Positions 49,973-64,000 of a stretch of DNA of 64,000 nt are shown here, one piece after another (position 1 is the stretch's first letter; the number at the start of each line of letters is the position of its first letter). The notes under the pieces were generated by a model, which had not been told where the DNA came from, did no database searches, and was given only the letters and a program-made list of their open reading frames with translations. Location: the IMG/VR virus record IMGVR_UViG_3300010334_000023, positions 152,499 to 216,498 of that record; one strand, written 5' to 3'. The position numbers and the translations under genes were made by a program.

Positions 49973-51043
49973 ATGAAGATAGGTGTATATACGATCGCGT
50001 TAAACGAGCTACAGCACTGCGAACGCTGGGCTCAGAGCGTGGCAGATGCTGACTATCGTGTTGTGCTAGACACGGGTAGCACAGATGGCACGGTTGAGAA
50101 GCTGCGCGAGCTGGGTGTCACTGTGTTTGAACAACGTTTTGATCCATGGCGCTTTGATCATGCTCGCAACGCTGCGCTGGCCTGCTTGCCCACAGACACT
50201 GACATCTGCATCAGCCAGGACATGGACGAGTTCCTTGCTGAAGGTTGGCGACCCAAGATGGAAGCAGCTTGGCGCATGAACGAGACCACACGCTTGGCCT
50301 ATACCTATGTGTTTGATTATCGTGTTGGTGGACCAAATGATGGTTACCGCATGGACAAGATACACGCTAGGATAGGCTATCAATGGAAGCGCCCAGTGCA
50401 TGAGACAGTGTTCAGCACAGTGGGTCTTGAGAATGTTGCCGAAGATCTCAGCATAGTGCTGAACCAGATACAGGATCGCAGCAAGGACACTCGAGGGCGT
50501 TACTTGCCACTGCTGAAGATGGCAGCCGAGGAAGACAGCGACGACAGCCAGATCAGCTTTTGGTATGGCCGCGAGCTGATGTATGCGAACCAACATACCG
50601 AGTCAGTGACAGAGCTTGAGAGATATCTCAGCCTTGAGACCAGTAGGTGGCCCATAGAGCGTTCAGAAGCCATGATATACATCAGCAGGATGAGCGACAG
50701 CCGCAAGCTGGAATATCTGCAGCGAGCACTGATATGTTCGCCTGAACGCAGGCAGGTGTGGTTAGAGATGGCTCGCTACTATTACAACAACCAGGACTGG
50801 CACGGTCTGCTGTGGGCAGCTGGCAGCGGCATGGAAAAGAGCCGCAGGGATCACAGCTATCTGGACAGTGCAGATGCCTGGGGCAATCAGCTGCTGGACT
50901 TTGGCAGCATAGCTGCTGCTAACCTTGGATGGTACAGCAAGGCAGCTGATTGGTGCCGACAGGCACTGGACATGAGCCCCAGTGACGATAGATTGAAAAC
51001 CAACCTGCAGTGGATGCAGGATAAGATCAAGGGACAAGCATGA
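49973..51043 (+). CDS. GT2 glycosyltransferase with C-terminal TPR repeats
   Basis: VLDTGSTDGT; SQDMDE; WKRPVHE; TPR helices (FWYGRELMY, ALDMSPSD). Confidence 0.85.
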   Translation: MKIGVYTIALNELQHCERWAQSVADADYRVVLDTGSTDGTVEKLRELGVTVFEQRFDPWRFDHARNAALACLPTDTDICISQDMDEFLAEGWRPKMEAAWRMNETTRLAYTYVFDYRVGGPNDGYRMDKIHARIGYQWKRPVHETVFSTVGLENVAEDLSIVLNQIQDRSKDTRGRYLPLLKMAAEEDSDDSQISFWYGRELMYANQHTESVTELERYLSLETSRWPIERSEAMIYISRMSDSRKLEYLQRALICSPERRQVWLEMARYYYNNQDWHGLLWAAGSGMEKSRRDHSYLDSADAWGNQLLDFGSIAAANLGWYSKAADWCRQALDMSPSDDRLKTNLQWMQDKIKGQA

Positions 51044-52104
51044 TGCGCATAGCGATTTACGGACCAACCAAGAACCAAGCTCACCATGTGCAGGCATGGT
51101 ATGATAGCTGCAAGGATGCTGATGTTATCTGCATCGCAGACACTGGCAGCACAGACGGAACCAAGGAAGCCATGTTGGCACTGGGAGTGCAGGTCACGGA
51201 TGTCCGCATCATACCTTGGCGCTTTGACGATGCGTTCAACACTGCGATGTATCTAGTACCAGATGACATAGATGTGTGCATACGCCTGGACACCGATGAG
51301 AGACTGACACCAGGTTGGCGCGACAAGCTGGAAGCAGCTTGGAAGCCAGAAACCACGAGGCTGCGCTATCCCTACATCTGGAACTGGAACGCTGACGGCA
51401 CGCCAGGTCGCCAGTGGTACGGCGATCGCATACACAGCCGCAAAGGCTACCGCTGGATGGGAGCCACGCACGAAGGACTGGTCAGCAGATTACCAGAAAT
51501 ACATACTTTCACAGATGATTTCCAGATACATCACTTCCCAGATCCCAAGAGCAAGAGCGGTGATCTCAGCCTGCTGGAAGAAAGCGTGAGAGAGTGGCCG
51601 CATGATAGCCGCATCAAGGCCTACCTGGGCCGCGAGTATGCTTATCAAAAGATCTGGGACAAGTGCGCAGCTACCTACAAGGAATTCCTCGGTATGAGCT
51701 TTGACACGGTTGAGCGCTGCCAGGCTCTGACCACTCTGGCACAGGCTGAACCCGAGAACAAGCTGTTTTGGCTCAAGCAGGCTGCCTATGAAGTACCCAC
51801 TCATCGCGAACCTTTAGTAGCATTGGCACAGCACTACTATGAAGCAGCAGACTGGAAGAACTGCTACGACTATTCTCATCGCGCTCTCAAGATCACCAAG
51901 CATCCCATGGACTACACCTGCACACCTGAGGCATGGGGATGGCAACCGCATGATCTGCTGAGCATCGCAGCATGGAACCTAAGGCTCTATGACGAATGCT
52001 TGGAACAGGCCAAGACAGCTCTGGAAAAATCTCCAGATGACACGCGACTGAAAAACAATCTCAAGCTGATAGAGGATTTCATAGCCAAGAATCTACGTGG
52101 TTGA
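51040..52104 (+). CDS. GT2 glycosyltransferase with C-terminal TPR repeats (paralogue)
   Basis: IADTGSTDGT; RLDTDE; WMGATHE; YLGREY; ALEKSPDD. Confidence 0.85.
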   Translation: MMRIAIYGPTKNQAHHVQAWYDSCKDADVICIADTGSTDGTKEAMLALGVQVTDVRIIPWRFDDAFNTAMYLVPDDIDVCIRLDTDERLTPGWRDKLEAAWKPETTRLRYPYIWNWNADGTPGRQWYGDRIHSRKGYRWMGATHEGLVSRLPEIHTFTDDFQIHHFPDPKSKSGDLSLLEESVREWPHDSRIKAYLGREYAYQKIWDKCAATYKEFLGMSFDTVERCQALTTLAQAEPENKLFWLKQAAYEVPTHREPLVALAQHYYEAADWKNCYDYSHRALKITKHPMDYTCTPEAWGWQPHDLLSIAAWNLRLYDECLEQAKTALEKSPDDTRLKNNLKLIEDFIAKNLRG

Positions 52105-63100: not shown

Positions 63101-64000
63101 GTCCAACAGGTCCGATAGGAGCCACCGGTCTCACAGGATACACAGGACCAACTGGTGCCACGGGCGCCACAGGTCAGACTGGACAGACAGGTGCCACTGG
63201 ACCAAGCAGCACTGGTGCTAGCGGATCAACTGGTGCCACTGGTCCAACTGGACAGACAGGTGCCACTGGACCAAGCAGCACTGGTGCTAGCGGACCAACT
63301 GGTAACACTGGACCCACAGGGCCCACAGGTGCTACATCAACAGTGACAGGGCCAACTGGTGCTAACAGCACTGTGACTGGTCCAACCGGTCCAACTGGGC
63401 CTGCTTACACAGGAGCAACTGGTCCAGCTGTAACAGGTCCCACAGGTCCAACTGGACAGACAGGTGCTACTGGAGCTCAGGGTTCGCCGAGCGTGATAAC
63501 CGGACCAACTGGTTACACAGGGCCTACAGGTTCTACTGGACCATACGGACCTAGCGGAAACACAGGACCCACCGGACCAATTAGCGTGACCACTGGACCT
63601 ACCGGTAGCACTGGTCCGACCGGTGCCACAGGCGCAACATCAACTGTGACAGGTCCAACTGGTTACACAGGTTATACTGGACCCACGGGTGTCACAGGTC
63701 CAAGCGGAGGTCCTAGCGGTCCCACAGGAGCCACAGGTCCAACGGGTAGCCCAGGCACTGCTGCTAGCACAGGTGCCACTGGACCTACTGGACCAACAGG
63801 TGCAAGTGGTGCCACAGGCGCCACAGGTGGTATTGGTCAAACTGGTGCCACTGGTGCTACATCAACCGTGACCGGTCCCACAGGTGCCACTGGTTCAGGC
63901 AGCACGGTAAGCGGTCCCACAGGTGCCACTGGTGCCACGGGCGCCACGGGTGTCACTGGACCCAGCGGTGGACCCACAGGTGCCACTGGTCCAACCGGAG
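60184..64000 (+). CDS. Very long Gly-X-Thr collagen-like protein (3'-truncated, >1270 aa; absent from ORF track)
   Basis: [37 protein letters not shown]...then [12 protein letters not shown] triplets. Frame 1 is still in register at the non-repeat island 62821-63000 (SVKIVGAV...TGDLWVY...[10 protein letters not shown]). No stop was seen before the window end. Confidence 0.85.

What the first reader, a model, noticed from the sequence alone, without database searches (positions are those of the whole stretch)
49973..64000. GT2-TPR protein glycosyltransferases plus Thr-rich collagen fibres suggest a phage-built glycan coat
Seen: two GT2-TPR paralogues, and four late genes (37996, 40225, 55494, 60184) with Gly-X-Thr collagen where Thr dominates the Y position. 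Established: GT2-TPR enzymes are typically protein/peptide glycosyltransferases (SunS type; C. difficile SgtA glycosylates the collagen-like BclA3). Gly-Pro-Thr collagens such as BclA are O-glycosylated, and glycosylated Thr in the Y position stabilises triple helices that lack hydroxyproline. Inference: the phage O-glycosylates its own collagen fibres, using the sugar from the RLP operon and further tailoring by the 1-10 kb operon. The result would be a spore-nap-like virion glycocalyx.
Basis: partly seen in the sequence, partly recalled or inferred. Interest (0 to 1): 0.82.

Follow-up and report, generated by a model that had tools for sequence, protein, structure and literature searches.

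The report
Phage collagen fibres with their own glycosyltransferases
A large lake phage carries two enzymes of the same build as the one that puts sugars on the threonines of a bacterial spore's collagen-like hairs, and across phages and bacteria such enzymes sit next to threonine-rich collagen genes, so phage collagen fibres are probably sugar-coated by the phage itself.

Summary
Two 35%-identical GT-A + TPR proteins lie at 49973-52104. Four fibre genes carry Gly-X-Thr collagen. The largest, 60184 onwards, has 335 triplets with Thr at Y in 261 and is still open at 1353 aa.

The core inference is strongly supported by comparative genomics, though not by experiment.
- 48 of 80 viral loci with a homologue of the enzyme hold a GXT collagen ORF, against 1 of 118 random viral loci.
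- 27 of 120 collagen-seeded viral loci hold the enzyme, against 0 of 118 random loci.
- The same pairing recurs in Clostridia, next to BclA-type collagen, and in Mesorhizobium.
- No other gene family is shared by more than one locus between viral and bacterial contexts.

The AlphaFold model's best fold matches are the peptide glycosyltransferases ThuS and SunS. C. difficile SgtA has the same size and architecture and glycosylates the same GPTGATG motifs, but I could not compare it directly by sequence.

Two peripheral claims fare worse.
- The RLP cassette is a separate, widespread viral sugar module. It meets the GT2-TPR genes only in this phage's close kin.
- The 1-10 kb operon shows no sugar-related domain.

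The enzyme-substrate pair is known from spores. Its use on phage fibres appears undescribed.

The parts
49973..51043 (+). GT2-TPR glycosyltransferase 1 (356 aa): GT-A domain about 1-165, linker, TPR-like helices 172-355
   Evidence: Pfam GT2 23.6 bits plus TPR and TPR_P4H 24 bits. phrog_13126 E 4e-83. AF2 pLDDT 93.7. Foldseek ThuS/SunS E 2e-16. DxD (D83, D85) invariant. Groups with the alphaproteobacterial clade in the tree.
51040..52104 (+). GT2-TPR glycosyltransferase 2 (354 aa), a paralogue
   Evidence: 35% identity to the first paralogue over full length. Pfam GT2 21.7 bits. Keeps all invariant columns of alignment A1. Forms a clade with the second copies of L008, L009 and L011.
60184..64000 (+). 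Giant collagen-like protein: 60-aa N-terminal head, then more than 1000 residues of G-(A/P)-T repeats with short STVT-type breaks and one 58-aa insert. It runs off the window and off every assembly.
   Evidence: 335 triplets, 261 with Thr at Y. 342 Thr plus 77 Ser in 1272 aa. GPTG occurs 101 times, GATG 83 times, and the SgtA acceptor core [10 protein letters not shown] 3 times. Pfam Collagen 339 bits. At least 1353 aa.
55494..59669 (+). Tail-fibre protein (1391 aa) with a G-P-T collagen segment at residues about 151-245
   Evidence: phrog_17885 tail fibre E 8e-77. 26 triplets, 19 with Thr. Pfam Collagen 37 bits.
59685..60137 (+). 150-aa protein between the two fibre genes, function unknown
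   Evidence: Only phrog_1276 (unknown function) E 7e-7. Conserved with both neighbours in all assemblies.
37996..40212 (-). Fibre-type protein (738 aa) with short GXT collagen segments
   Evidence: 14 triplets, 8 with Thr. Tail-fibre PHROG hits, largely over the collagen segment. Pfam Collagen 22 bits, below cut-off.
40225..41553 (-). Fibre-type protein (442 aa) with short GPT collagen segments
   Evidence: 16 triplets, 8 with Thr. phrog_13657 E 5e-24, phrog_14467 virion structural protein E 5e-8.
46671..49324 (+). RLP cassette directly upstream: NTP-transferase, cupin-like 110 aa, RuBisCO-like protein, 157-aa protein. A possible nucleotide-sugar module whose link to the GTs is unproven.
   Evidence: Pfam NTP_transferase E 1e-10, RuBisCO_large E 9e-37. 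The cassette is conserved in 71-78 of 80 viral RLP loci, but GT2-TPR occurs in only 6. Neighbours elsewhere are sugar-nucleotide enzymes.
49234..49971 (+). DUF7796-like protein between the RLP cassette and the GTs
   Evidence: Pfam DUF7796 19.6 bits, below cut-off. phrog_13607 E 4e-15. Present in 17 of 80 RLP loci.

Best explanation
The two GT2-TPR proteins are cytoplasmic, metal-dependent, inverting GT-A glycosyltransferases. They O-glycosylate Thr, and probably Ser, at the Y position of the Gly-X-Thr repeats in the phage's own collagen-like fibre proteins. The main substrate would be the giant product of gene 60184. Lesser substrates would be the short collagen segments of 55494, 37996 and 40225.

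The C-terminal TPR solenoid is proposed to hold the extended, not yet folded, collagen chain while the GT-A domain transfers a sugar from a nucleotide sugar. That is how SgtA works on BclA3 peptides.

The glycosylated Thr would then play the part of hydroxyproline and allow or stabilise the triple helix. The result would be sugar-covered fibres at least about 290 nm long (inference: 1005 residues x 0.286 nm).

Shown here: the gene content, the fold, and the genomic coupling of enzyme and substrate families. Inferred: the acceptor, the residue, the timing, the role of the TPR domain and the effect on folding. The donor sugar is unknown. UDP-GlcNAc is the default guess by analogy. A product of the adjacent RLP cassette is possible but unsupported.
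For: 1. Enzyme to collagen. 48 of 80 viral loci holding a homologue have a GXT collagen ORF (at least 10 triplets, at least 40% Thr at Y), against 1 of 118 random viral loci. That is 6.35 versus 0.10 ORFs per 100 kb.

2. Position. 78 of 79 such ORFs are on the enzyme's strand, about 70 upstream against 6 downstream (rest overlapping or abutting). 32 of 62 loci have one within 3 kb upstream, often abutting the GT start.

3. Collagen to enzyme. 27 of 120 viral loci seeded with a [15 protein letters not shown] pattern hold the enzyme, against 0 of 118 random loci (Fisher p 3e-9).

4. Bacteria.
- 21 of 27 alphaproteobacterial-type loci hold GXT collagen, as do 27 of 52 Bacillota loci.
- In 22 of 49 Bacillota loci the collagen gene lies within 500 bp.
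- One neighbour carries a BclA C-terminal domain (98 bits).
- One Clostridial locus lies between hisS/aspS and other housekeeping genes, so it is not a prophage.
- No other gene family is shared by more than one locus between viral and bacterial contexts.

5. Within 80 phage loci that share the RLP cassette, GXT collagen is present in 6 of 6 with GT2-TPR and in 2 of 74 without.

6. Fold. The best PDB matches are ThuS and SunS, which are peptide glycosyltransferases (E 2e-16 to 1e-13, TM 0.61-0.64). By sequence, 7msk scores E 0.002 and the flagellin O-GlcNAc transferase GmaR scores E 0.037.

7. SgtA is 358 aa, with GT-A at 1-260 and four TPR at 262-358. It lies next to bclA3, is Mn-dependent, uses UDP-GlcNAc, and glycosylates Thr or Ser in peptides such as [15 protein letters not shown] (PMC7157674). 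That core occurs verbatim three times in gene 60184.

8. (Gly-Pro-Thr)10 folds into a triple helix only when its Thr is glycosylated. TGP and TGA triplets are anomalously frequent in viral collagens (PMC11923368).
Against: - No biochemical or proteomic datum exists for any phage member.
- In this window the GT genes are not adjacent to a collagen gene. The nearest starts 3.4 kb downstream, past four genes on the other strand. The GT genes are instead packed against the RLP cassette.
- Viral collagens are Thr-rich in general, so the link may be to collagen fibres as such rather than to Thr.
- Many of the loci are related phages. At 60% GT identity only 5 of 14 viral lineages have a collagen ORF within 5 kb.
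- 32 of 80 viral loci show none within the DNA held, partly because of short contigs.
- Distant homologues in cultured jumbo phages lack the last TPRs. The one inspected, PaBG, has no annotated collagen nearby.
- Direct similarity to SgtA itself could not be measured.
Confidence: 0.7

Rival explanations
1. The GT2-TPR enzymes modify something other than phage protein: the host's envelope glycans (superinfection exclusion) or the phage DNA (anti-restriction). On this view they lie near collagen genes only because both live in the variable host-recognition island of phage genomes. This is how the literature and PHROGs currently read them.
For: - phrog_13126 is labelled 'beta-1,4-glycosyltransferase; moron, auxiliary metabolic gene and host takeover'.
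- Papers on freshwater actinophages propose DNA or cell-wall glycosylation for their glycosyltransferases (PMC10202952; PMC7029224).
- TarP/TarS teichoic-acid GT-A enzymes appear among the weaker fold matches (E about 1e-6).
- In this window the GTs sit beside a metabolic cassette, not beside a fibre gene.
Against: - The same enzyme-collagen pairing occurs in bacterial chromosomes with no phage genes around it, including BclA-type spore proteins.
- A shared 'variable island' does not explain why collagen ORFs lie upstream on the same strand, often abutting the GT.
- The best fold matches, by ten orders of magnitude in E-value, are peptide glycosyltransferases with the same GT-A plus TPR build.
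- There is no transmembrane segment or DNA-binding domain.
Confidence: 0.12
2. The enzymes are protein glycosyltransferases, but their targets are other virion proteins such as capsid, tail tube or decoration proteins, as in mycobacteriophages. Alternatively they target host proteins such as flagellin or pilin, as GmaR does. The collagen genes would be bystanders.
For: Phage-encoded glycosylation of capsid and tail-tube C-termini is established in mycobacteriophages (Freeman et al. 2023, cited in PMC12619734). GmaR, a GT2-TPR flagellin O-GlcNAc transferase, is a weak sequence and fold relative.
Against: Across phages, Clostridia and Alphaproteobacteria, collagen is the only neighbour that recurs. 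Capsid or tail-tube genes are not conserved neighbours. The biochemically defined enzyme of matching build, SgtA, acts on collagen repeats.
Confidence: 0.1
3. The full version of the reader's model. The RLP cassette makes an unusual nucleotide sugar, the two GT2-TPR enzymes put it on the collagen fibres, and the 1-10 kb operon tailors it further.
For: - From 46671 to 52352 the genes overlap or abut stop to start on one strand.
- This arrangement is kept in all six related phage loci.
- Elsewhere the cassette lies among NDP-sugar dehydratase, aminotransferase, O-methyltransferase and GT genes.
Against: - 74 of 80 RLP loci lack GT2-TPR.
- Apart from the window's near kin, the 80 GT2-TPR viral loci lack RLP-operon genes.
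- SgtA uses UDP-GlcNAc.
- The 1-10 kb genes have no sugar-related domain.
- No activity is known for this RLP.
Confidence: 0.15

Closest known systems
C. difficile SgtA (CD3350) with the exosporium collagen-like glycoprotein BclA3
   Same: - Length: 358 aa against 356 and 354 aa.
- Architecture: N-terminal GT-A domain plus C-terminal TPRs.
- Gene next to a Gly-Pro/Ala-Thr collagen gene. This holds for the family, and for its Clostridial members beside BclA_C-bearing proteins.
- SgtA's acceptor peptides ([10 protein letters not shown]) occur verbatim in gene 60184.
   Different: - Encoded by a phage. The presumed substrates are tail or virion fibres, not a spore coat.
- Two tandem paralogues. 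These are also common in Clostridia: 42 Bacillota loci have a pair.
- Here the genes lie 3.4 kb from the nearest collagen gene.
- The donor sugar is unknown.
- Sequence identity to SgtA itself was not measured.
SunS / ThuS glycocin S-glycosyltransferases (PDB 7MSN, 7MSK)
   Same: Best structural matches (Foldseek E 2e-16, TM 0.63). They have a GT-A domain followed by TPR-like helical domains and glycosylate a ribosomal peptide.
   Different: They modify Cys on a small bacteriocin precursor. Identity is 14-17%. The NCBIfam SunS model scores 17 bits against a cut-off of 350. They are about 65 aa longer.
Listeria GmaR, the flagellin O-GlcNAc transferase and anti-repressor (PDB 7X9R, 22AO)
   Same: A GT2 plus TPR protein that O-glycosylates Ser/Thr of a filament protein. 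Weak sequence match (E 0.037) and fold match (E 3e-6).
   Different: Its substrate is flagellin. It has an added regulatory role. The relationship is distant.
Mycobacteriophage virion glycosylation (Freeman et al. 2023)
   Same: Phage-encoded glycosyltransferases decorate the phage's own structural proteins (cited in PMC12619734).
   Different: The targets are the C-termini of capsid and tail-tube subunits, not collagen repeats. The enzymes were not compared here.
Glycosylated-Thr collagens: Riftia cuticle collagen and the (Gly-Pro-Thr(beta-Gal))10 peptide; BclA of B. anthracis
   Same: Thr at Y takes the place of hydroxyproline, and its glycosylation makes the triple helix stable (PMC11923368). 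BclA collagen regions carry O-glycans (PMC12357932).
   Different: These are an animal and a spore system. For viral collagens neither the modification nor an enzyme has been reported in the papers searched.

Membership tests
GT-A fold, family-2-type glycosyltransferase | Rossmann-like GT-A fold | tested here: met
   The AF2 model (pLDDT 93.7) has alternating strand/helix at 3-165. Foldseek matches GT-A enzymes ThuS, SunS, TarP, TarS and RmlT.
GT-A fold, family-2-type glycosyltransferase | DxD metal/nucleotide-sugar motif | tested here: met
   D83-M-D85 (DMDE) in GT1 and DTDE in GT2. Both Asp are invariant in 23 homologues.
GT-A fold, family-2-type glycosyltransferase | Pfam PF00535 at or above the gathering score | tested here: inconclusive
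   GT1 scores 23.6 against 23.3 and just passes. GT2 scores 21.7 and just fails.
SgtA-type collagen Thr/Ser O-glycosyltransferase | About 358 aa: GT-A domain followed by about four C-terminal TPRs | tested here: met
   356 and 354 aa. Helical repeats at 172-355. TPR_2 and TPR_14 hits. SgtA description in PMC7157674.
SgtA-type collagen Thr/Ser O-glycosyltransferase | Gene coupled to a Gly-X-Thr collagen-like gene | tested here: met
   For the family: 48/80 viral, 21/27 alpha-type and 27/52 Bacillota loci, against 1/118 random. In this window, collagen genes lie 3.4 kb downstream and 8.4 kb upstream, not adjacent.
SgtA-type collagen Thr/Ser O-glycosyltransferase | Sequence homology to SgtA of C. 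difficile | not testable with these tools
   No tool returned the SgtA sequence. Clostridial homologues (38-43% identical to GT1) were searched, but C. difficile was not among the 120 listed of at least 7995 hits.
SgtA-type collagen Thr/Ser O-glycosyltransferase | Transfers beta-O-GlcNAc from UDP-GlcNAc to Thr/Ser of collagen repeats | not testable with these tools
   This needs an enzyme assay.
SunS family peptide S-glycosyltransferase (TIGR04195) | Score at or above the NCBIfam cut-off (350 bits) | tested here: not met
   17.3 bits, E 0.0016. The fold is related, but this is not a member.
Collagen triple-helix repeat proteins (PF01391) | Uninterrupted G-X-Y runs; Pfam at or above 27.2 bits | tested here: met
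   60184: 339 bits. 55494: 37 bits. 37996 scores only 22 bits and 40225 has no hit, although both show runs of 4-8 triplets.
Collagen triple-helix repeat proteins (PF01391) | Forms a trimeric triple helix | not testable with these tools
   This needs CD or melting curves, or cryo-EM.

The most novel reading that the evidence does not exclude
Phage-encoded SgtA-like enzymes may be the general answer to how viral Gly-Pro/Ala-Thr collagens fold without hydroxyproline. On this reading, a large share of environmental phages (at least 483 viral contigs carry the enzyme) build O-glycosylated collagen fibres. In this jumbo phage the sugar would be a non-standard one made by a RuBisCO-like-protein pathway. 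That would give fibres several hundred nm long with a dense coat of a new glycan.
Probability: 0.12. Interest if true: 0.85.

Novelty: new member of a known kind. Interest (0 to 1): 0.62.

Why it matters
Thr-rich collagen repeats are the commonest kind in viral proteins. A (Gly-Pro-Thr)n peptide does not fold unless its Thr is glycosylated. A 2025 analysis states that it is unknown whether, when and how this happens (PMC11923368).

A dedicated enzyme encoded beside these genes in many phages gives a concrete and cheap test. It would also add tail or whisker fibres to the short list of glycosylated phage parts, which bears on host recognition, stability and antibody recognition of phages.

It would correct a widespread annotation too. 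This family is currently read as a DNA- or envelope-modifying 'moron' gene.

The family's reach into Mesorhizobium and Bradyrhizobium, next to collagen proteins of more than 1300 aa with 93% Thr at Y, points to glycosylated collagen surface proteins outside spore-formers.

Tried and rejected
- Megablast of 45.9-56 kb against GenBank phages gave no match. The phage is known only from metagenomes.
- I tried to place C. difficile SgtA in the family by searching with an Anaerovoracaceae homologue. The family is too large (at least 7995 hits, 120 listed) and no C. difficile entry was listed. The genome-contig scan kept only the best 80 of 173.
- The TPR_P4H hit (24 bits, below cut-off) and the collagen prolyl-4-hydroxylase peptide-binding domain 6evl (E 0.006) suggested a collagen-chain-binding TPR. 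This domain is not among the top 50 fold matches, so I keep it only as a lead.
- The promoter and terminator scan of 45.7-55.7 kb gave counts at chance level and no clear operon boundaries.
- Pfam and PHROGs on the 1-10 kb genes found nothing but radical SAM/SPASM.
- PaBG-, Lu11- and Erwinia-type jumbo-phage homologues (23-34% identical, last TPRs not aligned) were considered as members. PaBG has no annotated collagen gene within 20 kb. I treat them as a more distant branch, not as counter-examples.
- A literature search for RLP with phage and nucleotidyltransferase found nothing.
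Full report
**Where the window comes from**

The window is the last 64 kb of a 216,498-bp freshwater-lake contig (JGI Ga0136644_10000002, IMG/VR UViG_3300010334_000023). It has no close relative among GenBank phages. PHROG hits to tail fibre, virion structural proteins, exonuclease, a ClpB-like ATPase, peptide deformylase and PhoH mark it as a large tailed phage.

**The observation: the two enzymes**

ORFs 49973-51043 and 51040-52104 encode proteins of 356 and 354 aa. 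They are 35% identical end to end.
- Pfam sees them only marginally: GT2 at 23.6 and 21.7 bits against a cut-off of 23.3, with sub-threshold TPR hits.
- The family is nonetheless clear. phrog_13126 matches at E 4e-83. The protein search found 835 homologues.
- The AlphaFold2 model has mean pLDDT 93.7. It shows a GT-A domain followed by about eleven helices.
- The DTGSTD and D-x-D motifs are invariant in an alignment that includes both paralogues.

**The observation: the collagen genes**

- Gene 60184 is extreme. It has 335 G-X-Y triplets in the visible 1272 aa. Thr is at Y in 261 of them and Ala or Pro is at X in 216. One residue in three is Thr or Ser.
- Six independent assemblies carry gene 60184. 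The four compared are identical or 99.9% identical to the window. All six stop inside it. The longest reading is 1353 aa and still open.
- Genes 55494, 37996 and 40225 hold only 14-26 triplets each.
- Gene 55494 is a tail fibre by its C-terminal part (phrog_17885, E 8e-77).

**Is the enzyme tied to the collagen? From enzyme to collagen**

I ran it in both directions.
- A profile scan of IMG/VR found at least 483 viral loci with a homologue. I took the best 80, with up to 10 kb on each side.
- 48 of them hold an ORF with at least 10 collagen triplets of which at least 40% have Thr at Y.
- 118 random viral loci, fetched with an arbitrary 14-mer, hold one such ORF. That is 0.10 per 100 kb against 6.35.
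- The collagen ORFs are not scattered. 78 of 79 lie on the enzyme's strand. About 70 lie upstream and 6 downstream, with the rest overlapping or abutting.
- In 32 of 62 loci with enough sequence, one lies within 3 kb upstream, often ending where the GT begins.

**From collagen to enzyme**

120 viral loci were fetched with a degenerate [15 protein letters not shown] pattern. 27 of them contain the enzyme. None of the 118 random loci does (Fisher p 3e-9).

**Independence of the evidence**

Many viral loci are related, so I looked for unrelated contexts. A scan of one genome per bacterial species returned two groups.
- Mesorhizobium, Bradyrhizobium and other Alphaproteobacteria: 21 of 27 loci carry GXT collagen. 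The proteins are 1000-1600 aa, have a DUF4347 head and have 93% Thr at Y. The enzyme lies in a cluster with two further large glycosyltransferases.
- Spore-forming Clostridia: 27 of 52 loci carry GXT collagen. In 22 of 49 the collagen gene is within 500 bp.
- One Clostridial neighbour ends in a BclA C-terminal domain (98 bits).
- One Clostridial locus lies between hisS/aspS and other housekeeping genes, so it is not a prophage.

Gene clustering across all 160 loci found almost no family shared between viral and bacterial contexts, apart from the enzyme itself. One cluster has 14 viral members and a single bacterial one. Collagen is the only other recurring neighbour.

In a tree of 201 copies the viral, alpha-type and Bacillota enzymes form nearly separate clades (4 changes of group). 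The pairing is therefore old or has been assembled repeatedly.

A further natural control comes from the RLP loci. Of 80 phage loci sharing the RLP cassette, the 6 with GT2-TPR all have GXT collagen. Of the 74 without, 2 do. Those six are close kin, so this counts as one event.

**What the enzyme looks like**
- Foldseek against the PDB puts ThuS and SunS first (E 2e-16 to 1e-13, TM 0.61-0.64). These are GT-A plus TPR-like enzymes that glycosylate a ribosomal peptide.
- Consensus TPR proteins follow at E about 1e-7. Teichoic-acid GT-A enzymes follow at about 1e-6.
- By sequence the only non-TPR PDB hits are ThuS (E 0.002) and the flagellin O-GlcNAc transferase GmaR (E 0.037).
- The window proteins are not members of the SunS family (17 bits against a cut-off of 350).

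**The closest characterised system**

That system is SgtA of C. difficile (PMC7157674).
- It is 358 aa, with GT-A at 1-260 and four TPR at 262-358.
- Its gene lies immediately upstream of bclA3.
- It depends on Mn2+ and is specific for UDP-GlcNAc.
- It adds beta-O-GlcNAc to Thr, and also to Ser, in peptides such as [15 protein letters not shown] and [15 protein letters not shown].

The core [10 protein letters not shown] occurs three times in gene 60184. GPTG occurs 101 times and GATG 83 times. I could not obtain the SgtA sequence through any tool, so direct homology is untested. The Clostridial homologues beside BclA-type genes make it likely.

**Mechanism proposed**

Both paralogues keep all invariant residues, so both are probably active.
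- They have no signal peptide or membrane segment, which suggests they act in the cytoplasm.
- A GT2 enzyme inverts, so it would give a beta-linked sugar.
- (Gly-Pro-Thr)10 is a random coil unless its Thr is glycosylated. TGP and TGA triplets are anomalously common in viral collagens (PMC11923368).
- The most economical reading follows. The TPR solenoid holds the unfolded chain, the GT-A domain loads Thr at Y, and the sugar then permits or stabilises the triple helix.
- The second paralogue may serve other repeat types (GAT against GPT) or may extend the glycan. Nothing here decides between these.
- With 1005 residues in G-X-Y register, the fibre would be at least about 290 nm long (inference).

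**The peripheral claims: the RLP cassette**

The cassette comprises NTP-transferase, a cupin-like protein, a RuBisCO-like protein and a 157-aa protein.
- It is tightly packed, with overlapping or near-abutting stops and starts, against DUF7796 and the two GTs.
- It is a module in its own right. In 80 viral RLP loci the four genes travel together in 71-78.
- In those loci it sits among NDP-sugar dehydratase/epimerase, DegT aminotransferase, sugar O-methyltransferase, UDP-GlcNAc 2-epimerase and GT1/GT4 genes.
- A role in nucleotide-sugar synthesis is therefore plausible.
- Only 6 of the 80 have GT2-TPR. Only the window's near kin among the 80 GT2-TPR viral loci carry RLP-operon genes (gene clusters found in 4 loci).
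- A supply line from RLP to these GTs is thus possible in this lineage but unsupported.

**The peripheral claims: the 1-10 kb operon**

This operon has no recognisable sugar enzyme. Only a radical SAM and a SPASM protein were found.

**Known or new**
- The enzyme-substrate pair is known from C. difficile spores.
- Phage virion glycosylation is known from mycobacteriophages, with other targets.
- In the papers searched, nobody links this GT family to phage collagen fibres.
- Actinophage papers suggest DNA or cell-wall modification for their glycosyltransferases, and list collagen-like proteins as a separate 'island' (PMC10202952).
- PHROGs files the family under host takeover.

I therefore rate it a new member of a known kind, in a new and apparently widespread setting.

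**Caveats**
- Everything rests on gene neighbourhood, fold and analogy.
- The viral loci are not phylogenetically independent.
- The bacterial baseline was not measured.
- The link to Thr cannot be separated from the general Thr-richness of viral collagens.
- In this particular window the GTs are near the collagen genes, not next to them.

Noticed in passing
window 46671-49324; loci L287-L366: A four-gene viral cassette of NTP-transferase, cupin-like protein, RuBisCO-like protein and a 157-aa protein. It is conserved in 71-78 of 80 viral RLP loci, some of them labelled giant-virus MAGs. It is embedded among NDP-sugar dehydratase, aminotransferase, O-methyltransferase and GT genes. The RLP keeps the IKPK and K-x-D-E motifs but, by eye, lacks others. 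No paper was found. It looks like an undescribed RLP-dependent nucleotide-sugar pathway.
   Followed up: partly
window 60184-64000; L001-L006: Every one of six independent assemblies ends inside the giant collagen gene, at 1259-1353 aa. Its 3' end, C-terminal domain and downstream genes are unknown, and the 216-kb contig is incomplete for this reason.
   Followed up: yes
L087-L109 (Mesorhizobium, Bradyrhizobium and other Alphaproteobacteria): Chromosomal genes for DUF4347-headed collagen-like proteins of 1000-1600 aa with 93% Thr at Y. They lie about 5 kb from a cluster holding the GT2-TPR homologue, a 1272-aa TPR/GT32-like protein and an 889-aa GT1/GT4-type protein. I know of no description of glycosylated collagens in rhizobia.
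   Followed up: partly
L112, L113, L165 and 39 other Bacillota loci: In Clostridia the GT2-TPR gene is usually a tandem pair (42 loci). The second copies form a single clade, so the two-enzyme arrangement is old there. It arose separately in the window's phage lineage.
   Followed up: partly
window 49973-51043: In the tree, GT1 falls inside the alphaproteobacterial clade (support 95) rather than with the bulk of viral copies. GT2 groups only with second copies of related jumbo phages. This may hint at the host group or at gene exchange with it.
   Followed up: no
window 42149-45901 (- strand): A chaperone and protein-maturation cluster: ClpB-like ATPase (phrog_4871, E 1e-246), peptide deformylase (phrog_2890) and a DnaJ-like protein with an HPD motif. 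It lies directly between the collagen-fibre genes and the sugar operon.
   Followed up: no
window 30899-37930 (- strand): A 2343-aa ORF with no Pfam hit and only two weak PHROG hits of unknown function. It lies next to the fibre genes.
   Followed up: no
window 7748-10245 and 22710-23621: A radical SAM protein plus a SPASM-domain protein follow six consecutive ORFs without any family hit (plus two more, one with only a weak PHROG match). A QueE-like radical SAM gene (phrog_2076) further on suggests 7-deazaguanine chemistry.
   Followed up: no
L285 (Actinomycetia phage DSL-LC01, OQ999401.1): This cultured freshwater actinophage has the closest named homologue (39% identity). The gene lies 4 kb downstream of two annotated collagen genes, with an annotated 'tryptophan halogenase' between. 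A second GT and a UDP-galactopyranose mutase lie nearby. It is a ready experimental system.
   Followed up: partly
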